Shown here: one piece after another, positions 2 to 54,209 of the stretch
Layout of the letters: every line of letters starts with the position of its first letter
Numbering within the stretch: position 1 is the stretch's first letter
IMG/VR virus record: IMGVR_UViG_3300042922_000643
Coordinates: 1-64,000 of that record
Length of the DNA: 64,000 bases
Strand: one strand, 5' to 3'
Made by a program: the position numbers and the translations under genes
The notes under the pieces: model-generated
Database searches by the model: none
Told to the model about the DNA's origin: nothing
The model's input: the letters and a program-made list of their open reading frames with translations, nothing else

Positions 2-181
2 GCGGGTATAGAATGTACAGCTATGAATATCATAAGCATGATAGTTAAAAAAGCTCCTCCATTAGAATCATTCAATCGCGCTCATGCCTTGTCGTATAGC
101 TTTATCAGCCATCCTGACACCTATGAAGGCTTGCTTACTAGTAACGAAAAATGCATGTTTTTACTGGATGATCAGGAGTGA
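2..181 (+). CDS. Partial hypothetical protein (5' end outside window) with C-terminal tag NEKCMFLLDDQE
   Basis: Frame open from base 2 to TGA at 179-181 (my translation; not in the ORF track). Confidence 0.65.
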   Translation, partial: AGIECTAMNIISMIVKKAPPLESFNRAHALSYSFISHPDTYEGLLTSNEKCMFLLDDQE

Positions 182-186
182 TACCT

Positions 187-330
187 ATGATCGATGAATA
201 CAAGCCTATGTCTAGTGAGGAAATAGATCTTTGGATAAAAAAAGTACAGAAGGAAGTTAATGAAACTTTAATCCGATTATTGTGGAGAACGAACGAGGAT
301 TATTCTAAAGATTTACAAGATTGTGAGTAA
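187..330 (+). CDS. 47-aa hypothetical protein with C-terminal tag NEDYSKDLQDCE
   Basis: AGGAG RBS upstream of ATG187; MIDEYKPMSSEEIDLWIKKVQKEVNETLIRLLWRTNEDYSKDLQDCE; below the ORF-track size cutoff. Confidence 0.75.
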   Translation: MIDEYKPMSSEEIDLWIKKVQKEVNETLIRLLWRTNEDYSKDLQDCE

Positions 331-1258: not shown

Positions 1259-1627
1259 ATGTATCTACTTGAAATCAAATATGAAGATAAAATTCATATT
1301 ATTGAGAAGATCCAAGTTTTGGAGCAATCTTCTGATTACCCAGAAGTTAAGTTTGCTTACATTGAAGTGCCACATAACGTACTTCAGCTTTCTCATAACG
1401 ATAGGTTTCTACGTACTTTTTTTAGCGGTATAGGTTCAAGTTGTTACCCTATTATTTATCAAGACCCTGATTTCCCTATGGATGAAAATGCACAAACCTC
1501 AAGATGTGTGTCTAGTAGTCCGTATCGATGGATTGAAATATCTACTTCGGAAAAAGGAAAACTTGCAACCTTACTTACCGATGCAGTTAATCAAGAATTT
1601 GCTCGTCACTTACCTGATTTTGAGTAG
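1259..1627 (+). CDS. Paralog family A member 1, with C-terminal tag NQEFARHLPDFE
   Basis: AGGAGGTG RBS before ATG1259; shares AYI/AFI and YRWIEIS motifs with downstream genes. Confidence 0.8.
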   Translation: MYLLEIKYEDKIHIIEKIQVLEQSSDYPEVKFAYIEVPHNVLQLSHNDRFLRTFFSGIGSSCYPIIYQDPDFPMDENAQTSRCVSSSPYRWIEISTSEKGKLATLLTDAVNQEFARHLPDFE

Positions 1628-1638
1628 GAGGCTTTAAA

Positions 1639-2007
1639 ATGTATACTGTTGAAATTACAGCGAATGGTCTTCATTTGATCAAGGATGTCTTATACCTTGA
1701 AAAGATGACGGATTGGGATAATCAAAGATGGGCGTTTATTAAACTAGATAGTAAAGAAGAACTTCAAAGATATCGACAAGACGATAGCTTGAGGCATATA
1801 TTTGGTGTTTTCGGCTGGACCGCATACACTTTTGAATATATACAGCCAGGTTTTCAACTTGCAGATAAGCATGATGCGACAATGTTTGGACAAGACTCTA
1901 TATATCGATGGATTGAAATATCGAATTCATTAAAAGGTCAACACGCTGTACTCCATCGGGCATTATATAATGAAGAATATTTGCCTATACTATCAGATTA
2001 TGAATAG
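1639..2007 (+). CDS. Paralog family A member 2, tag NEEYLPILSDYE
   Basis: RBS; WAFIK and YRWIEIS motifs. Confidence 0.8.
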   Translation: MYTVEITANGLHLIKDVLYLEKMTDWDNQRWAFIKLDSKEELQRYRQDDSLRHIFGVFGWTAYTFEYIQPGFQLADKHDATMFGQDSIYRWIEISNSLKGQHAVLHRALYNEEYLPILSDYE

Positions 2008-2738: not shown

Positions 2739-3077
2739 GTGATGTTAATGAAATTTCTTGTCTATAAAAAGAATCCTGATTTGTTTCGAAAGAGAGTTCT
2801 TGTCATCGATATATGGATGAAAACAGATAAGTATGCCTGCTTTGAACTTGCCGAGGACGAAAGCTGTCCTTTTAGCTGCGGAGAAGGTGCTCCAGGATCT
2901 GATAGTGATATCTTATATGTTGATCCATCTTTTCAGCTCACCGAAGAAATATTAGAAGAAATGGATGCTTCAGATACTCGGTTTAAGTGGGTTAAACTTA
3001 GCAATGAACATGTTGAATTCGTTGATGTCCTTGATACAAATGAATCTATGGTCAGTATTCTACGAGAGTGTGAATAG
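2739..3077 (+). CDS. Paralog family A member 4, tag NESMVSILRECE
   Basis: YACFE and FKWVKLS motifs; shares EEILEEM with 2019..2408 (DKILEEM). Confidence 0.75.
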   Translation: MMLMKFLVYKKNPDLFRKRVLVIDIWMKTDKYACFELAEDESCPFSCGEGAPGSDSDILYVDPSFQLTEEILEEMDASDTRFKWVKLSNEHVEFVDVLDTNESMVSILRECE

Positions 3078-16714: not shown

Positions 16715-17026
16715 ATGCGGTTGATGAATCAAATACCTTTAGAATGCGTAATACCAGGAATGCGCGTAAGGCTATCACCACAATCTCCATTTCACGAAGC
16801 TGGTCAGTCTTGTGATTGGGAAGGAAACGAATATGATGGGACCGTAACTTATGTTCACAAGGCTAATATAGATTGGTTCCCTATCAATGTAATATGGGAC
16901 GGCGAGCTAGATCATTCTATTCCAGTCCTTGAACAAAAAGGAGAGTATTGTTATGGTGTTTCTGATTTGATTTTTCTCCTTGTAAATAATGAACAGCTTA
17001 CACTATTCCTGGAAGATTTCGATTGA
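16715..17026 (+). CDS. Paralog family B member 1, tag NEQLTLFLEDFD
   Basis: PGMRV...GNE..GTV...WFPINVIWD...Y.YG..DL. Confidence 0.75.
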   Translation: MRLMNQIPLECVIPGMRVRLSPQSPFHEAGQSCDWEGNEYDGTVTYVHKANIDWFPINVIWDGELDHSIPVLEQKGEYCYGVSDLIFLLVNNEQLTLFLEDFD

Positions 17027-17036
17027 GAGGTGCATT

Positions 17037-17333
17037 ATGCAGAATATCCTATCGGATTTCAAACCTGGTACGCGAGTCGGGATGTCGAAGAACTCTGCAT
17101 TTTCCCATTTAAATCAATCTTTTGATGCTAGGGGAAATGAATGTCTTGGAACAGTAATAACTATCAGCTCTAGTGGAAGATGGTTTCCAATCAATGTTCT
17201 ATGGGATTACGAGGTAAGTCCTGGTTGGAAAGCATCCTGGCACCGAGGTACCTATAGTTACGGCCCAACAGATCTTGTGATTATTGGCGACAGTAATAGT
17301 AGTATGGTAGAATATCTATTAGATATAGAATAG
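17037..17333 (+). CDS. Paralog family B member 2, tag NSSMVEYLLDIE
   Basis: ATG17037 after GAGAGGTG; PGTRV...GNE..GTV...WFPINVLWD. Confidence 0.75.
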   Translation: MQNILSDFKPGTRVGMSKNSAFSHLNQSFDARGNECLGTVITISSSGRWFPINVLWDYEVSPGWKASWHRGTYSYGPTDLVIIGDSNSSMVEYLLDIE

Positions 17334-17345
17334 GGAGTCGATAGT

Positions 17346-47800: not shown

Positions 47801-48700
47801 ATGCCAACAATGATTTTTAGCCACACCGATCTCGATGGAGTTGGTCCAATTGTGATTGCCAAAAAATATTTTGATGAAACTGTAGACTATAAGATGTGTA
47901 ACTATGATCGAATCGATGAAACGGTTCAGGAGTTTATTACTAGCGGCTCTTATATGAAATATGATAGAGTCATTATCACGGATATTTCGGTCAATAAAGA
48001 GACCGCTGGCCTTATTGATCACGTCACGAAAAATAACTGGCTCTTATTTGACCACCACCCGACGGCTCTTTGGCTCCATGACGCTTATTCTTGGGCGAAT
48101 GTGCGTGAGTATGAAGAAGATGGTGTTACCAAAACCTGTGGAACAAAGATGTTTTATGATTCCCTTGTAAGACACAATGAAATTATTGGTGGTGCTTCTG
48201 CATTCGTTTATCTGGTTCAGCAGTATGATACATGGGCCTGGAAAGAAACTAACAATCAGCAGGCTAAGAGATTGAACGATCTTTATTATCTGATTGGCCC
48301 TTCGAAGTTCATTGCTAGATTCTCTAATGAGATATCAACTACGCTTACCTATGAAGAAGAAACAATCCTTGATATCGAGAATGAAAAGATTGAAAAGTAT
48401 ATCAAGAAAAAGGCAGACGAAGTCTTAGCTCATAACATTGGAAAATATTCAGCGGGTGTTGTCTTTGCTGATCGTTACATTTCTGAGCTTGGTAATAAAC
48501 TTGCTGAAGCTTACCCTCAATTTGATTTCATTGCTATGGTAGATATGTCTAGTAAGAAGGTTAGCTACCGTACAGTTAGAGATGATATTAATGTTAGCGA
48601 GATTGCACAATATTATGGTGGCGGCGGACATCCAAAAGCTTCAGGCTCTCAGTTCAACCATAGACTGATTACACGTTTTCTAGACAATATATTTGAATAG
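47801..48700 (+). CDS. DHH/DHHA1 phosphoesterase (oligoribonuclease-like)
   Basis: SHTDLDG, ITDIS, FDHH, YDTW, GGGGHPKASG. Confidence 0.92.
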   Translation: MPTMIFSHTDLDGVGPIVIAKKYFDETVDYKMCNYDRIDETVQEFITSGSYMKYDRVIITDISVNKETAGLIDHVTKNNWLLFDHHPTALWLHDAYSWANVREYEEDGVTKTCGTKMFYDSLVRHNEIIGGASAFVYLVQQYDTWAWKETNNQQAKRLNDLYYLIGPSKFIARFSNEISTTLTYEEETILDIENEKIEKYIKKKADEVLAHNIGKYSAGVVFADRYISELGNKLAEAYPQFDFIAMVDMSSKKVSYRTVRDDINVSEIAQYYGGGGHPKASGSQFNHRLITRFLDNIFE

Positions 48701-50250: not shown

Positions 50251-51117
50251 ATGGGGAATCAAGATATGACTGATGATTTTAAAAGACGTTACGATCAATT
50301 TGGTGACAACGCAAACCTAATCAATATGGTACACAACTTCTTACAGGAAGAAGGCCGTGCAAACCATCAGAAGCGTATCGACGAAGGACGCACAGGTAAA
50401 TTTTACCCTAGTTCTGTAGGCCGCTGTAATCGTCAAATTGCGTATCAGATGCTGGGCTACCCTGGAGCAGATAAAGCAGGGCAAACCATTCTGATTATGG
50501 ATAATGGAACCTACTTTCATAATCGTATGGAGGATATGTTTGAGCGTATGGGAATATTAGTAGCTCCTGAACTCAAGCTCGTTGATCCCGACCTAAGAAT
50601 TAGTGGTAGATCCGATGCGATCATCTGGAACTTTTTAAAAGAAGAAGATGAGCCTGACGGTGAGATCATTAGTCTGTACCAACCTAAAGCGATATTCGTG
50701 GCTGACGGAGAAGATATAGAGGTAATCTCTGAAGTCTATCATGGTCCCGCCAATAATGTTATGATCGTAGAATTTAAAAGCATTAAGAGTAAGAACTATG
50801 ACAAGCTTCCCAAGTCTAAGCCTAAAAAAGAACATGCTATGCAGTTACAGCTGTATATGTATATGACAGGAATTCGCAAGGGGCTTGTATACTACGAGAA
50901 TAAAGATACGCAGGAACAAAAATATTTCATCGTTGATTATGACCAGTCTGTCGTCGATGGTGTGATCAGCTCGATCCGCTCCATCATTGCTATGGTGGAC
51001 ATTGGCCAGCTTCCTGACAGAGAACACCCACCTATTAGCTTTGAATGCATGTATTGTGACTTCAAAGACATCTGCTATCCACAAAAACAAGAATTCAATA
51101 TTGACGATATATTTTAG
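50251..51117 (+). CDS. Cas4-like PD-(D/E)XK exonuclease
   Basis: YPSSVGRC, GTYFH, GRSD, VEFKS, QLQLYM, C-terminal CMYCDFKDIC. Confidence 0.88.
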   Translation: MGNQDMTDDFKRRYDQFGDNANLINMVHNFLQEEGRANHQKRIDEGRTGKFYPSSVGRCNRQIAYQMLGYPGADKAGQTILIMDNGTYFHNRMEDMFERMGILVAPELKLVDPDLRISGRSDAIIWNFLKEEDEPDGEIISLYQPKAIFVADGEDIEVISEVYHGPANNVMIVEFKSIKSKNYDKLPKSKPKKEHAMQLQLYMYMTGIRKGLVYYENKDTQEQKYFIVDYDQSVVDGVISSIRSIIAMVDIGQLPDREHPPISFECMYCDFKDICYPQKQEFNIDDIF

Positions 51118-51171: not shown

Positions 51172-51212
51172 AAAAGCCAGGGCCCGTCTAGTCAACGGAA
51201 GTCCTGGCTTTT
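51172..51212. terminator. Bidirectional terminator at the strand switch
   Basis: AAAAGCCAGGGC...GTCCTGGCTTTT. Confidence 0.75.
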
Positions 51213-51219
51213 GTCATGT

Positions 51220-51897
51220 CTATTCGTAATCAGGTAAATACTTGAGGAAGTCTTCGTTGGTATAACCAGCGAGCGACTCGTATGGACCAAGTTCTTGAGC
51301 AAAGGCTTCGGGACTATAGACTTCTCGCAAATGTTTAAGCTCGTCTTCATCATAGAGTCCTAGTCGTAATGCATCTCGATAATCATATTGTAAACATAAG
51401 AATTCATTTAGTGATTTCCCTTTGTTCTCTTCAATAAGCCGATCCATGAATGAACCTTTATGTAAGTAGCTGCCTGTAACTAAAAGTTTTGCCTGTGGGA
51501 AGTATCTTAGAATATCATCATCATTCATTCGAGGACCTTCTATAGCTCGTTTATATCCGCCCTCGTCAACTGCGATTCTTTCGAGTCGCAAACCTCTCAT
51601 TTCTTCCAGGTTCGAAGCAAAACGAATTGTAGATCCATTCTTAAGTACGATAATATCCCGATTACATATCTCAATTTGGTCTGCGTATCTATCCATGACA
51701 TCAACAACAATATGGTTTATCACATGCTTCCATTGTGTGAAATACAAAGCGTTTCCCTTTGTCTCTGCCAACCAATCAACAAGCATTGTTGTTTTTCCCA
51801 TCCGTCGTGCCATACGAACGATTGAGATTTTTGCGTCACTCTCATACAAAGCTGTCCGAATATCTTTCCCCAGTTCTAAAAGTCTTGCCTCACTCAT
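51220..51897 (-). CDS. Truncated terminase large-subunit ATPase-like protein, tag NEDFLKYLPDYE
   Basis: MARRMGKTT Walker A, LKNGSTIRF, MRG...IAVDEG Walker B, FAQE; no nuclease domain. Confidence 0.7.
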   Translation of the reverse strand: MSEARLLELGKDIRTALYESDAKISIVRMARRMGKTTMLVDWLAETKGNALYFTQWKHVINHIVVDVMDRYADQIEICNRDIIVLKNGSTIRFASNLEEMRGLRLERIAVDEGGYKRAIEGPRMNDDDILRYFPQAKLLVTGSYLHKGSFMDRLIEENKGKSLNEFLCLQYDYRDALRLGLYDEDELKHLREVYSPEAFAQELGPYESLAGYTNEDFLKYLPDYE

Positions 51898-52437
51898 CTA
51901 CTTTTCCTCCCCAAATAATTGGATGCCGAGCTTTGCGTCGGCTGCATAAATCTTTCCTTTAACCAATTCCTCTGTGATCTTTTCATTGTGCGCAATGCGA
52001 ATTAATGTGACGTTATTCTTTTTACACCCGATATCTTTCAGGCGATCACATTCTTGATAGTACTGGAAGTTCTTCACGCTTTTATGTATGTATTTTTTAT
52101 ACTCCGTATGTGTAGAGCCATCGAACTCAAAGCCAAGCCGAAGCTGTGGGTAGTAACGATCTATCTGTAGCTCACTGTTTTTAGGGCTGCGTAGGAATGA
52201 GTAGAAGCCGTGGTTGATATATTCGTAGCTTCCAAGGAGAGGTTCTAATACGGAGAATAAAGAGAGTTCACCTTCGGTGTTCTTGTTCTTAGGATAGCGG
52301 CGCTTACCTCGCTTGCTTTTAGACTTAGCTTTCGGAGGAGCTTCTTTCTTAACCGATTTACACTCCTCGCATTTGAGCGGCTTCTTCGTTGTGTATTCCA
52401 TAACGATGCCGCAGTTGATACACTTTGTATACTTCAC
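51898..52437 (-). CDS. Zn ribbon plus Vsr/DUF559-like endonuclease
   Basis: CINC..CEEC; LQID.Y...FEFDGSTH...DRLK...LIRI. Confidence 0.75.
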   Translation of the reverse strand: MKYTKCINCGIVMEYTTKKPLKCEECKSVKKEAPPKAKSKSKRGKRRYPKNKNTEGELSLFSVLEPLLGSYEYINHGFYSFLRSPKNSELQIDRYYPQLRLGFEFDGSTHTEYKKYIHKSVKNFQYYQECDRLKDIGCKKNNVTLIRIAHNEKITEELVKGKIYAADAKLGIQLFGEEK

Positions 52438-53285
52438 TGGTATCCTTCCTTTGAAATCCTCTCCATAGCGATTTGGATTAGATTGATCGCTTTCTGTCTG
52501 TACTTGAATATTGTGTTCAGATGCATCCCCATAGACTTGGCAATATCTTTATCAGCCATTTTGTCTTCATAATGCATCTTCAATATCATGCGGTAAAGCG
52601 GTGATAAACCCTCAAATTCTTCTCCACAGGTCAACCCTCGTACCCAAGCATTTCCCAGATCATCATCCTCAACTAGCAAAGGCGTGTTCACCATAATCTG
52701 TTTGTTATATTCTTCTTCGCTTTTTTCGTCAACGGCAAAAGCTTCGTTCATCACAACAAATTTTGATTTGCGATACTGTAGATTATAAGGTTCCATTTTT
52801 CTCACATGGCGCTGAATATAATCAATGATTGCATAGTTATAAGAGTTGTAAAGATAGCCTTGGAAGTAAACGCTTTTCTTAATATGTCGATAGCGATACA
52901 TCTGCTTTATAAAGAGGCATCGAAGTTCTTGTTTCAAATCCTCGTCAGGCACAGAGCTTAAGTAAGAGACGATCATGTCCACAGTTTCATAGACCTTTAA
53001 GCGAACATCGGTGTATTGGAAGAAGCGTTTCATCGCATTACGTGTTTCGACTTCCTTAATGAAACAGTTTATGAACTCTCTAGCGTCACGATCCTTGAAA
53101 GGGAATCTTCCCTTCCGTAAGATCTGATAATATTTACCTACATAAAGACTCATAGGTTCATCGGGATGACAACCAAAACGTCTCATTACTTCTTCGCCTG
53201 CTTCATGATCGCCTGATTGGAATCGTAACACGAGCTCGTCAACTTCGAGCATCTTTTGTTTTTGGTATCCACTCGCGACTTTCAT
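52434..53285 (-). CDS. Phage RNA polymerase sigma-70-family factor
   Basis: ELVLRFQSGD, EDLKQE, region-4 HTH LSPLYRMILKMHY...DIAKSMGMHLNTIFKYRQKAI. Confidence 0.8.
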   Translation of the reverse strand: MKVASGYQKQKMLEVDELVLRFQSGDHEAGEEVMRRFGCHPDEPMSLYVGKYYQILRKGRFPFKDRDAREFINCFIKEVETRNAMKRFFQYTDVRLKVYETVDMIVSYLSSVPDEDLKQELRCLFIKQMYRYRHIKKSVYFQGYLYNSYNYAIIDYIQRHVRKMEPYNLQYRKSKFVVMNEAFAVDEKSEEEYNKQIMVNTPLLVEDDDLGNAWVRGLTCGEEFEGLSPLYRMILKMHYEDKMADKDIAKSMGMHLNTIFKYRQKAINLIQIAMERISKEGYQ

Positions 53286-53714
53286 GTATTGACCTCAGCT
53301 TTCTTCTTAGATGTCTCCAAAGTGATCTATGATGCGGATAATTGTGTGTTCGTCCTCAGAAATGTGTCCTTCGGGACCGAAAATTTTACTTAGAGGACTC
53401 TCTCCAAAAGAAGAATTTCCATCAAAATCTATGACTTCAAACCCCTCCATATTCAATAGCTGATCAATAAAATCATTCATGCCGCCCATTTCACTAGCAT
53501 CAATCTCAATGACCTGGTAACCAATCTGTTCGCCTTCACCGTCAAAGCTAGTAAAGAAAGGGTTTTTTGCTATTTCCTGATCAGCTTCAGAAAGATCAAG
53601 GATCATCGTAATGAGATCCCCTGCTTGATTATTATCTAGCATCTCGGCCAATTCATCAACACTTATTTCAACAGAGATACTTCCTTTTTGGATCTTCATT
53701 ATGTATGCCCCCTG

Positions 53715-54209
53715 TTATGCCTGATTTTCTTTAGCTTTACTCACACATACATGCGCCATAGCCAAGGCTTCTGCAATATCATTCTGAACAAATTTTAGTT
53801 TAAGGCCATACATATCATTAATTGCGCGGACACAATCCTTCTTGTTTGCTTTACCACTTTGTAAACCTATGAATGCTTTCCGCCAGGAGCTAGGTGCCAT
53901 TGTGCGGAAAGGAATTTGTTTCTGTGCAGCAAGCAGCATGATTGCGCCACGGTTCTGTGACAGCTTCTTTAAGGTGTCTACGTTGCATCCTTGGTATTGG
54001 TCTTCACAGAGGATACTAGACACACTATACTTAGCAAGAAGCTCGGAGAGGAAGCGGTACTGCACCTCAACCACCTCGTGGATAGCTAGGTGCTTATCAG
54101 CCTTGATCCTACCATAATCTACAATCTCGTGATTACCATTCAGTAGTCCCCAGCCTGTAGACCATATGCTTGGATCAATACCTAGGTAGTACTCTTCCAT
54201 CTCCGCCAT
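53715..54209 (-). CDS. ruvC: RuvC-like Holliday junction resolvase
   Basis: LGIDPS..TGWG, CEDQY, PSSWRK, ANK, NDIAEAL. Confidence 0.88.
   Translation of the reverse strand: MAEMEEYYLGIDPSIWSTGWGLLNGNHEIVDYGRIKADKHLAIHEVVEVQYRFLSELLAKYSVSSILCEDQYQGCNVDTLKKLSQNRGAIMLLAAQKQIPFRTMAPSSWRKAFIGLQSGKANKKDCVRAINDMYGLKLKFVQNDIAEALAMAHVCVSKAKENQA

What the first reader, a model, noticed from the sequence alone, without database searches (positions are those of the whole stretch)
51220..51897. Stand-alone truncated terminase ATPase carrying the C-terminal tag
Seen: 225 aa with terminase-type Walker A (ARRMGKTT), KNGS.I.F, RG..., Walker B (VDE) and FAQE, ending in the 12-mer tag where the nuclease domain would begin. 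It lies outside any packaging module. Known: Avs-type STAND defence proteins sense the terminase ATPase domain. Inference: a decoy or bait for terminase sensors, or a packaging regulator. Clean replacement of the nuclease domain by the tag argues against a simple pseudogene.
Basis: partly seen in the sequence, partly recalled or inferred. Interest (0 to 1): 0.62.

Follow-up and report, generated by a model that had tools for sequence, protein, structure and literature searches.

The report
Stand-alone terminase ATPase paralog, jumbo phage
A soil jumbo phage, probably of Bacillus, carries beside its normal DNA-packaging enzyme a second, short copy of that enzyme's ATP-driven motor domain; it is an intact, conserved gene whose job is unknown, not a broken remnant.

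Summary
Window 51220-51897, minus strand, is a 225-aa ORF with terminase-type Walker A, RG/Walker B and motif III. Its model (pLDDT 86.8) superposes on the whole ATPase domain of large terminases (P74-26 Z 15.9; T4 gp17 residues 144-357), and it ends in a 12-residue tail.

"Truncated" is wrong. It is a full-length member of a family of about 205-250 aa (34 cluster representatives, aligned end to end). The gene always sits last in a RuvC / acidic protein / sigma factor / Zn-ribbon nuclease-like operon. This holds in Bacillus jumbo phages WH1, Edson and KLEB27-3 and in uncultured relatives.

The phage has a separate intact 601-aa TerL 122 kb away, so this is neither a split terminase nor a pseudogene.

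The tail did not simply replace the nuclease. Its core (N-x-x-F/Y-x-x-L-L) is among the best conserved parts of the family. In this phage about 13-18 unrelated small ORFs end in the same motif, which suggests a shared docking site.

Most likely it is an ATP-binding, TerL-like accessory motor or switch that the tail tethers to a partner. The Avs-decoy idea is untested and not favoured. It is a new variant of a known kind, of moderate interest.

The parts
51220..51897 (-). CDS of the 225-aa stand-alone TerL-type ATPase (P0001), stop codon included
   Evidence: ORF and translation. Fold and profile matches to large-terminase ATPase domains. Full-length family member.
51787..51813 (-). Walker A / P-loop, residues 29-37 (MARRMGKTT)
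   Evidence: In the family alignment R31 and G34 are 30/30, K35 is 28/30 and T/S36 is 30/30. The segment aligns to RRHGKT of HSV pUL15.
51556..51597 (-). RG motif plus Walker B, residues 101-114 (RGLRLERIAVDEGG). R101 lies 11 residues before the catalytic E112.
   Evidence: D111 is 27/30. Position 112 is E in 15, D in 14 and N in 1. G102 is 27/30, R101 16/30 and R104 21/30. The segment aligns to IRGQDFNLLFVDEA of pUL15. Equating R101 with the trans arginine finger of P74-26 (R139) rests on spacing and on my knowledge only.
51469..51486 (-). Motif III / coupling motif, residues 138-143 (LLVTGS)
   Evidence: S/T at position 143 in 26/30 members. It aligns to IIFVSS of pUL15.
51280..51303 (-). 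Lid-subdomain signature, residues 199-206 (FAQELGPY; family consensus F-x-x-E-F-G-P-W)
   Evidence: F199 is 28/30, E202 25/30, G204 30/30 and P205 29/30. The folded model ends near residue 208, at the TerL ATPase/nuclease boundary.
51223..51258 (-). C-terminal tail, residues 214-225 (NEDFLKYLPDYE). The model gives a short helix at 214-220 with low confidence.
   Evidence: N214 is 30/30 and L221 29/30; the family consensus is N-x-x-F/Y-x-H-L-L. pLDDT is about 60. The same motif ends 13-18 other ORFs of this genome. It is kept in a 172-aa lid-less relative, L046.
51173..51211 (.). Hairpin between the convergent genes, a likely bidirectional intrinsic terminator. It ends the operon right after the stop codon.
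   Evidence: Fold gives dG -22.3 kcal/mol, z -3.1, and no shuffle of 200 does as well; a U-rich run follows. The simple scan missed it because the stem has an internal loop.
51898..52437 (-). Upstream gene, 179 aa: a four-Cys Zn ribbon plus a domain shared with homing endonucleases. Its stop TAG abuts the ATG of the ATPase gene, and its last codons carry that gene's Shine-Dalgarno (51906-51910).
   Evidence: PHROG 27771, 559 and 19778 at E about 3e-9; no Pfam hit. It is 49-61% identical in relatives. It is also present in 0305phi8-36 (gp194), which lacks the ATPase gene.
52434..53285 (-). Sigma-70-family factor, 283 aa; overlaps the 179-aa gene by 4 nt
   Evidence: Pfam Sigma70_r4_2 at 27 bits. 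PHROG 36 and 351. The KLEB27-3 and WH1 orthologues are annotated as sigma factors.
53307..53699 (-). Acidic 130-aa protein of unknown function, a conserved member of the cassette
   Evidence: Weak but syntenic homologues in L008, L010, L046, KLEB27-3 and WH1. No family hit.
53715..54209 (-). RuvC-type Holliday-junction resolvase, 164 aa; first conserved gene of the cassette
   Evidence: Pfam RuvC at E 1.7e-18. Syntenic in all relatives.

Best explanation
SHOWN.
The ORF encodes a complete stand-alone paralogue of the ATPase domain of the large terminase (RecA-like core plus lid). It derives from the TerL of this phage lineage. It is a full-length member of a family of about 205-250 aa. That family occupies a fixed slot as the last gene of a RuvC / acidic protein / sigma factor / Zn-ribbon nuclease-like operon, facing a Cas4-like exonuclease gene. 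This arrangement is found in a clade of jumbo phages that includes Bacillus phages WH1, Edson and KLEB27-3 and several uncultured relatives. The genome has its own intact 601-aa TerL elsewhere.

INFERRED.
1. The P-loop is invariant, and this copy keeps Walker B D-E, the RG arginine and motif III. The protein therefore binds ATP and, in this phage, probably hydrolyses it. It would do so as a TerL-like oligomer on DNA.
2. The most conserved family-specific parts are the lid signature F-x-x-E-F-G-P-W and the C-terminal helix N-x-x-F/Y-x-x-L-L. The tail is therefore a docking peptide that tethers the ATPase to a partner.
3. In this phage the tail carries the same ending as 13-18 small, unrelated ORFs. 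These proteins therefore compete for, or are gathered at, one docking site.
4. From its operon (resolvase, nucleases, a middle/late sigma factor), I commit to this role: an accessory DNA-dependent motor or nucleotide switch acting on replicated or recombining phage DNA during its maturation for packaging. It is not the packaging motor itself.

Confidence differs by layer: identity and functionality about 0.9, tail as docking peptide about 0.5, the specific role about 0.3. The single figure given (0.55) is for the statement as a whole.
For: Fold:
- pLDDT 86.8.
- VIA-align Z 15.9, 15.0 and 12.6 to the P74-26, Sf6/HK97 and T4 TerL ATPase domains, covering model residues 9-208.
- Foldseek lists hold only terminases at the top.
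- ESM Atlas neighbours are all Terminase_6N.

Descent from the lineage's TerL. Family-profile bit scores fall in this order: Moorella phage TerL 71.8, 0305phi8-36 TerL 62.9, own TerL 56.5, Acinetobacter ME3 38.1, HSV pUL15 38, T4 gp17 27.

Full-length family: 34 representatives at E below 1e-3, nearly all 203-252 aa and aligned end to end.

Conserved slot and tight coupling:
- The genes abut or overlap.
- The ATPase gene has its own Shine-Dalgarno and is followed by a terminator.

Motif conservation is counted.

Separate intact TerL: 601 aa, Terminase_6N at 26.6 bits, 64% identical over 98% of its length to the TerL of Bacillus phages Edson and WH1.

Tail:
- It is enriched at C-termini in this genome.
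- The conservation is at peptide level.
- It is retained in the lid-less 172-aa relative.
Against: - No experiment and no expression data exist; only soil DNA runs hold the sequence.
- Half of the family has D, not E, at the catalytic position. The RG arginine is kept in only 16 of 30 members, and two members have GRT in the P-loop. Hydrolysis may therefore not be the conserved activity.
- The protein is the fastest-evolving gene of the cassette apart from the acidic protein: 24-28% identity against 34-61% for its neighbours. That fits a conflict interface or weak constraint better than a core enzyme.
- 0305phi8-36 keeps RuvC, the sigma-like gene and the nuclease-like gene but lacks the ATPase. 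The ATPase is therefore dispensable for that trio.
- The docking partner is unidentified. The genome has no phage beta-clamp and no ClpP.
- Tail enrichment is absent from WH1 and KLEB27-3.
- Synteny in phages is conserved even between functionally unlinked genes.
Confidence: 0.55

Rival explanations
1. Regulatory or poisoning subunit of a terminase ring. The ATPase-only paralogue would co-assemble with full-length TerL, either the phage's own (to time or tune packaging) or that of a competing phage or satellite. It would use the conserved ring interfaces of the ATPase domain, and its tail would dock on the portal or on the TerL nuclease domain.
For: It covers exactly the ring-forming domain of TerL and is closest to TerLs of its own lineage. 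TerLs of own, WH1 and KLEB27-3 carry E-F-G, then 7 residues, then N-K-D-F/Y at the ATPase/nuclease junction. This resembles the family's E-F-G-P-W ... N-K-D-F-K-H-L-L. The extreme C-termini of lambda gpA and T3 gp19 bind the prohead (my knowledge). No TerS is annotated in this lineage.
Against: Own TerL is 64% identical to WH1 TerL while the mini-ATPase is below 28% identical between the same phages. Such drift is hard to reconcile with a shared, co-evolving ring interface. BLASTP of the two proteins shows only the P-loop. A profile of the lid plus tail does not detect any TerL, so the N-K-D-F resemblance is by eye only. The gene lies 122 kb from the packaging genes, in a DNA-metabolism operon.
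Confidence: 0.17
2. One reading: an anti-defence decoy or bait. The protein would show terminase-sensing Avs-type STAND proteins a TerL ATPase fold, soaking them up or failing to trigger them. The tail would mark it as one of a set of counter-defence or take-over proteins.
For: The fold matches the PhiV-1 TerL that Avs3 binds (8dgc_E, Z 13.4). The protein diverges fast within a conserved cassette. It shares its tail with many small ORFs in gene arrays typical of early or take-over regions. Avs recognition is fold-based rather than sequence-based (my knowledge of Gao et al. 2022).
Against: Nothing here tests Avs binding. The nuclease domain, which Avs3 also contacts (my knowledge), is missing. 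The gene sits in a middle-type DNA-metabolism operon behind a sigma-factor gene, not among the early arrays. A stoichiometric decoy would have to be made before, and in excess of, TerL. The most conserved parts are the lid and tail, not the TerL-like surface. WH1 and KLEB27-3 keep the gene without any tail enrichment.
Confidence: 0.1
3. Transcription-linked DNA-tracking ATPase. The ring-forming motor would work with the co-translated sigma factor and Zn-ribbon protein to couple late transcription to DNA, by analogy with the T4 clamp / gp33 / gp55 system, where C-terminal tails do the docking.
For: The sigma, 179-aa and ATPase genes overlap or abut in every relative. The 179-aa family also ends in a tail-like motif, N-x-x-L-Y-x-x-hydrophobic-hydrophobic.
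Against: 0305phi8-36 has the sigma-like and Zn-ribbon genes without the ATPase. The complex prediction of ATPase with the 179-aa protein gave no verdict, so it is not evidence either way. The T4 analogy is from memory only.
Confidence: 0.08
4. Decaying remnant of a duplicated TerL, or one half of a split or intron-interrupted functional terminase.
For: The length and end point equal the ATPase domain alone. Short Terminase_6N-only ORFs are common in metagenomes and in split TerL genes; one example is a 235-aa TerL piece of Pectobacterium phage CBB in the BFVD list.
Against: The same length and end-to-end alignment hold in 34 representatives. Invariant residues are spread along the whole protein. 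The gene has its own Shine-Dalgarno and terminator and is followed by a convergent gene, not a nuclease ORF. The genome has an intact TerL with its own ATPase.
Confidence: 0.02

Closest known systems
N-terminal ATPase domain of large terminases (T4 gp17 residues 1-360; Thermus phage P74-26 TerL 1-256; Sf6 gp2; HK97 TerL; HSV pUL15)
   Same: The fold matches over the whole domain, core plus lid (Z 12.4-15.9). It shares the arginine-containing P-loop, the RG ... hhhhDE motif and motif III. It is closest in sequence to TerLs of its own lineage.
   Different: It has no RNase H-like nuclease domain and no long N-terminal extension. It is encoded 122 kb from the packaging genes, as a second copy beside an intact TerL. 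A family-specific lid signature and a conserved C-terminal docking-type helix take the place of the interdomain linker.
phi29 gp16 / phi28 gp11 packaging ATPases
   Same: These are terminase-related ATPases that work without nuclease activity. They resemble the model structurally (5hd9 Z 11.4; 7jqp Z 10.5).
   Different: They are the sole packaging motors of their phages, sit in the packaging module and carry a C-terminal domain of about 120 aa. Only 1 of 30 family members touches Pfam Podovirus_Gp16, at E 0.046.
Hypothetical proteins KLEB27-3 gp091 (UNY39891.1), WH1 gp028 (BCO16081.1) and the Edson orthologue
   Same: They are orthologues by position in the same cassette and by profile match (51.4 and 47.2 bits). 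They come from cultured Bacillus jumbo phages.
   Different: They are annotated only as hypothetical. They are about 25% identical or less to this protein, and their C-terminal tails are degenerate. Their genomes show no enrichment of the tail motif.
Short Terminase_6N-only proteins of metagenomes and split TerL genes
   Same: They are 225-290 aa proteins with only the TerL N-domain, nearest by language-model features and by structure.
   Different: Many of them are likely pieces of interrupted TerL genes. This one coexists with a complete TerL and has its own conserved tail and genomic slot.

Membership tests
Large-terminase ATPase domain (Pfam Terminase_6N, ASCE P-loop) | Three-dimensional fold of the TerL ATPase domain, core plus lid | tested here: met
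   The model has pLDDT 86.8. VIA-align gives Z 15.9 with rmsd 3.1 A over 189 residues to P74-26, and TerL rows stand above helicases at Z 11 or less. Foldseek top lists hold only TerLs.
Large-terminase ATPase domain (Pfam Terminase_6N, ASCE P-loop) | Walker A with conserved arginine (R-x-x-G-K-T/S), Walker B hhhhD-E preceded by R-G, and motif III S/T | tested here: met
   All are present in P0001. In the family R31 and G34 are 30/30 and K35 is 28/30. The catalytic position is E in only 15/30 and R101 is kept in 16/30.
Large-terminase ATPase domain (Pfam Terminase_6N, ASCE P-loop) | Score above Pfam's gathering threshold for Terminase_6N | tested here: not met
   P0001 scores 12.4 bits against a cut-off of 22 (E 0.12). 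Eleven of 30 family members match, with a best E of 6.7e-7. Membership of the superfamily therefore rests on profile and fold evidence.
Functional large terminase (TerL) proper | C-terminal RNase H-like nuclease domain on the same polypeptide or in an adjacent ORF | tested here: not met
   The protein ends 17 residues after the ATPase domain. What follows is a terminator and a convergent Cas4-like gene. The same holds in all relatives.
Functional large terminase (TerL) proper | It is the genome's only TerL and lies in the portal/capsid packaging module | tested here: not met
   An intact 601-aa TerL lies at G000:C1:173782-175587. The neighbours of this gene are RuvC, a sigma factor and nucleases.
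Anti-Avs decoy / anti-defence protein | Binds or blocks a terminase-sensing Avs protein | not testable with these tools
   No host and no Avs sequence is known for this soil phage. There is only fold similarity to the Avs3-bound TerL (8dgc_E, Z 13.4).
Proteins of this genome that carry the C-terminal tail | Ends in N-x-x-hydrophobic-x-x-hydrophobic-L-x-D/E-x-D/E at the C-terminus | tested here: met
   P0001 ends N-E-D-F-L-K-Y-L-P-D-Y-E. Thirteen to 18 other ORFs of at least 6 unrelated families share the pattern, against 0.33-5 expected.
Sliding-clamp clients (PIP-box or beta-clamp motif) | Q-x-x-L/I/M-x-x-F/Y-F/Y or Q-L-S/D-L-F motif, plus a clamp to bind | tested here: not met
   The tail starts with an invariant N, not Q. 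No phage DNA_pol3_beta gene was found. T4-type clamp (gp45) and PCNA families were not searched, and binding to a host clamp was not tested.

The most novel reading that the evidence does not exclude
The tail is a phage-wide docking code. One site, on a still unknown hub such as the portal or procapsid, a replication/recombination factory, or the mini-ATPase's own core, would gather a TerL-derived motor together with more than a dozen small, unrelated proteins. In that case a terminase ATPase domain has been re-used as a tail-addressed motor or loader outside DNA packaging, for example to deliver or remove tagged proteins or to pull DNA during entry or maturation. The small proteins would imitate a peptide that descends from the TerL ATPase-nuclease linker.
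Probability: 0.12. Interest if true: 0.8.

Novelty: new variant of a known kind. Interest (0 to 1): 0.5.

Why it matters
Large terminases are treated as single-copy hallmark genes of tailed phages. Their ATPase domain is known only as part of the packaging motor.

This is a conserved, intact, ATPase-only paralogue with its own docking tail, kept in a fixed slot next to a resolvase, nucleases and a sigma factor in a whole clade of Bacillus-type jumbo phages. It shows that the motor domain has been duplicated and put to another, still unknown use.

The protein is annotated only as 'hypothetical' in the cultured relatives KLEB27-3, WH1 and Edson. The question can therefore be tested directly in tractable Bacillus hosts.

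There is also a practical point. Terminase-based phylogenies, TerL-based virus detection and studies of terminase-sensing immunity could all pick up this second copy.

The shared C-terminal tail in this phage is a separate lead. It points to a peptide-addressed interaction hub among phage proteins.

Tried and rejected
- Single-sequence AF2 gave an unusable model (pLDDT 40). The alignment-based run replaced it.
- Direct family scans of P0001 were sub-threshold.
- phmmer against the PDB gave nothing.
- Megablast and tblastn against 50,697 phage records gave nothing.
- The word-index protein search found only the protein itself.
- All contigs that carry the exact protein are identical over 10 kb, so no dN/dS could be computed.
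- The search for related loci with P0001 or the full alignment failed or found nothing. The subfamily alignment gave one viral, no genomic and three metagenomic loci.
- Uncultured jumbo contigs L007, L008 and L010 are not held for whole-record searches. I could therefore not test whether the tail flavour co-varies with other tagged proteins across phages.
- Homologues of a tagged small-protein family were found only in a near-identical phage.
- Complex prediction of the ATPase with the 179-aa neighbour returned 'no answer' (score 0.00). That is neither support nor evidence against binding.
- The idea that the tail reflects a repeated DNA element was rejected. Leucine and other codons vary. Only the final GAR plus TAG/TAA plus GAGG is DNA-level: it is the next gene's Shine-Dalgarno, and P0001 lacks it.
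- A phage-encoded beta-clamp or ClpP as the hub was rejected: neither family is in the genome.
- Homology of the tail to the TerL junction segment (E-F-G ... N-K-D-F) was seen by eye. A lid-plus-tail profile does not support it.
- No RNA runs hold the region.
- The papers searched describe no such paralogue.

Full report
WHAT IS THERE

The window is the first 64 kb of a 251,543-bp IMG/VR virus record that CheckV rates as complete. The same sequence occurs in several soil metagenomes.

The finding is an ORF on the minus strand, 51220-51897, of 225 aa.
- Its ATG follows directly on the TAG of the upstream gene.
- A GGAGG at 51906-51910 lies 8 nt upstream of the ATG.
- The stop codon is followed at once by a strong hairpin at 51173-51211 (dG -22.3 kcal/mol, z -3.1) with a U-rich run. 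This hairpin separates the gene from a convergent Cas4-like gene.

IS IT A TERMINASE ATPASE? YES.

Direct scans of the single sequence were sub-threshold: Terminase_6N E 0.12 and PHROG TerL E 0.0057.

An exhaustive phmmer search found 34 cluster representatives at E below 1e-3. Their alignment (A1) gave much stronger evidence:
- The A1 profile hits HSV pUL15 (E 1.3e-8), T4 gp17 (2.3e-5) and P74-26 TerL (6.7e-5) in the PDB.
- Eleven of 30 members match Terminase_6N.
- An AF2 model built with A1 reaches pLDDT 86.8.
- Its Foldseek hits are only large terminases: the PDB top 35 and the BFVD top 50.
- VIA-align gives Z 15.9 to the P74-26 ATPase domain (model 9-208 on chain 17-253), Z 15.0 to Sf6 and HK97, and Z 12.6 to T4 gp17 residues 144-357. 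Helicases stay at Z 11 or below.

The folded part therefore equals the entire TerL ATPase domain, core plus lid. It stops at the ATPase/nuclease boundary. The last 17 residues are a low-confidence tail with a short helix.

NOT TRUNCATED, NOT SPLIT, NOT DECAYING

Nearly all relatives are 203-252 aa and align end to end. Invariant or near-invariant residues are spread along the whole protein: R31, G34, K35, G88, G102, D111, D175, F199, G204, P205, N214 and L221.

The genome has a separate intact TerL of 601 aa at 173782-175587.
- It passes the Terminase_6N cut-off.
- It is 64% identical over 98% of its length to the TerL of Bacillus phages Edson and WH1.

BLASTP between the two proteins shows only the P-loop. 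The family profile, however, scores the own TerL at 56.5 bits. It scores 0305phi8-36 TerL at 62.9 and Moorella phage TerL at 71.8. These are higher than the scores for Acinetobacter ME3 (38), HSV (38) or T4 (27). The family is therefore an old duplicate of this lineage's TerL ATPase domain.

A FIXED GENOMIC SLOT

The order RuvC, a small acidic protein, a sigma-70-family factor of about 283 aa, a Zn-ribbon/homing-endonuclease-like protein of about 170-179 aa and the mini-ATPase recurs in every relative examined. A Cas4-like gene faces the ATPase gene, directly or after a few small ORFs. The relatives are:
- the uncultured jumbo contigs L007, L008 and L010 (197-239 kb);
- the smaller contigs L046 and L060;
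- the cultured Bacillus phages KLEB27-3 (gp086-gp091), WH1 (gp032-gp028) and Edson.

In the cultured phages the ATPase is annotated only as hypothetical. In most relatives the last three genes overlap or abut.

0305phi8-36 keeps RuvC, the sigma-like gene and the nuclease-like gene (gp192-gp194) but has an unrelated 102-aa gene in the ATPase slot. The ATPase is thus an add-on of a subclade and is not required by its neighbours.

Within the cassette it evolves fastest apart from the acidic protein. It is 24-28% identical between phages, whereas sigma, the nuclease-like protein, RuvC and Cas4 are 34-61% identical.

THE TAIL

The final 12 residues are N-E-D-F-L-K-Y-L-P-D-Y-E.

Across the family the core N-x-x-F/Y-x-H-L-L is one of the best conserved segments. 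N214 is 30/30 and L221 is 29/30, in a family with about 25% overall identity. A 172-aa relative that lacks the lid still ends in N-S-S-Y-K-F-L-L. The tail is therefore an ancestral, selected part of the protein and not a recent substitute for the nuclease.

What is special in this phage is the acidic ending and its spread to other proteins:
- Thirteen ORFs end in the narrow pattern, and nine match the strict 8-position pattern against 0.33 expected.
- Twenty-four match a looser pattern against about 5 expected.
- They belong to at least six unrelated families, mostly in arrays of small plus-strand genes.

Codons for the conserved positions vary, so selection acts on the peptide. Only the final GAR-stop-GAGG is a DNA signal, namely the next gene's ribosome-binding site. 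P0001 lacks it.

WH1 and KLEB27-3 show no such enrichment.

The simplest reading is a short docking motif for one shared partner. I could not identify the partner:
- The genome has no phage beta-clamp and no ClpP.
- The complex prediction with the upstream 179-aa protein returned no verdict.

HOW IT MOST LIKELY WORKS

Shown: an intact TerL-type ATPase domain with an invariant P-loop. This copy also has canonical Walker B D-E, the RG arginine 11 residues upstream, and motif III.

Inferred: it binds ATP and here probably hydrolyses it as a TerL-like oligomer on DNA, and its tail tethers it to a partner. From the operon context (resolvase, nucleases, sigma factor) I favour an accessory role in processing replicated or recombining DNA on the way to packaging.

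Caveats:
- Half of the family has D at the catalytic position, and the RG arginine is kept in only 16 of 30. Nucleotide binding may matter more than turnover.
- Phage synteny is weak evidence of a functional link.

RIVALS
- A subunit that mixes into TerL rings. The by-eye resemblance of E-F-G ... N-K-D-F in the lineage's TerLs is not supported by a profile, and the two proteins evolve at very different rates.
It is untestable here. The fast divergence and the shared tail fit it. The operon position, the missing nuclease domain and the pattern of conservation do not.
- A sigma-linked DNA-tracking ATPase.
- Decay or a split gene, which the evidence contradicts.

NOVELTY

The searched literature on jumbo phages and terminases describes no such paralogue. 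The database copies are unnamed or 'hypothetical'.

Short Terminase_6N-only proteins are common in metagenomes. The general phenomenon is therefore not unique. What seems not to have been reported is a conserved second copy with its own tail and slot.

Noticed in passing
window 178-330, 343-690, 1223-1627, 1639-2007, 2019-2408, 2739-3077, 16715-17026, 16989-17333 (all +). Outside the window: G000:C1 198514-198939, 199081-199497, 224232-224501, 224511-224753, 224765-225025, 237911-238234, 238579-238881, 241191-241472, 243817-244236.: Small ORFs of at least six unrelated families, several in tandem paralogue arrays, end in the same C-terminal motif N-x-x-hydrophobic-x-x-hydrophobic-L-x-D/E-x-D/E. 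Nine match the strict pattern against 0.33 expected. The partner of this tail is unknown.
   Followed up: partly
same tagged ORFs, e.g. window 1625-1640, 2005-2020, 17331-17345: Most tagged ORFs stop in GAR-TAG/TAA followed at once by GAGG and a start codon about 8 nt later. The last Glu codon and the stop codon therefore form part of the next gene's Shine-Dalgarno, which indicates tight translational coupling in these arrays.
   Followed up: partly
window 47801-48700 (+): The 299-aa DHH-family phosphoesterase ends in a tail-like N-H-R-L-I-T-R-F-L-D-N-I-F-E with slightly different spacing. It may be a further client of the same docking site.
   Followed up: no
L011 998-3922 (WH1 TerL), L013 1001-3955 (KLEB27-3 TerL), L048 498-3422 (Edson): The TerLs of the three cultured relatives are 974-984 aa. 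The family profile matches them in two pieces, about residues 31-58 and 479-611. They therefore carry an insert of about 420 aa right after Walker A, probably an intein. The TerL of this phage (601 aa) has no such insert.
   Followed up: no
L060 4258-4593 and 4686-5495: In this soil relative the Zn-ribbon/nuclease-like gene is interrupted. A 111-aa N-terminal piece stops inside the conserved Q-L-D-R-Y-Y-P-D-L-K-L-A-F-E block. A 269-aa ORF with weak similarity follows. This may be an inserted element or a rearrangement.
   Followed up: no
L060 41-355, 357-767, 832-1029: Three consecutive small ORFs of another phage of the clade end in S-N-(N)-R-x-A-x-x-hydrophobic-L. This may be that phage's own version of a C-terminal tail.
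   Followed up: no
L046 3636-4154: The mini-ATPase of this 12-kb viral contig is only 172 aa. The lid subdomain is missing, but it still ends in N-S-S-Y-K-F-L-L-E-S-A-Y.
   Followed up: partly
window 51898-52437 (-) and relatives (A4): The 179-aa neighbour is annotated 'homing nuclease' in WH1 and 0305phi8-36. Yet it is a syntenic gene, 36-61% identical, across the whole clade including 0305phi8-36, so it behaves as a core gene and not as a mobile endonuclease. One relative (L010) has Q where the others have the acidic residue of the F-E-F-D-G block.
   Followed up: partly
window 50251-51117 (+): A Cas4/PD-(D/E)XK exonuclease (PHROG 1706, E 5e-33) converges on the ATPase gene in all relatives. 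It is the most conserved gene of the neighbourhood, at 52-61% identity.
   Followed up: partly
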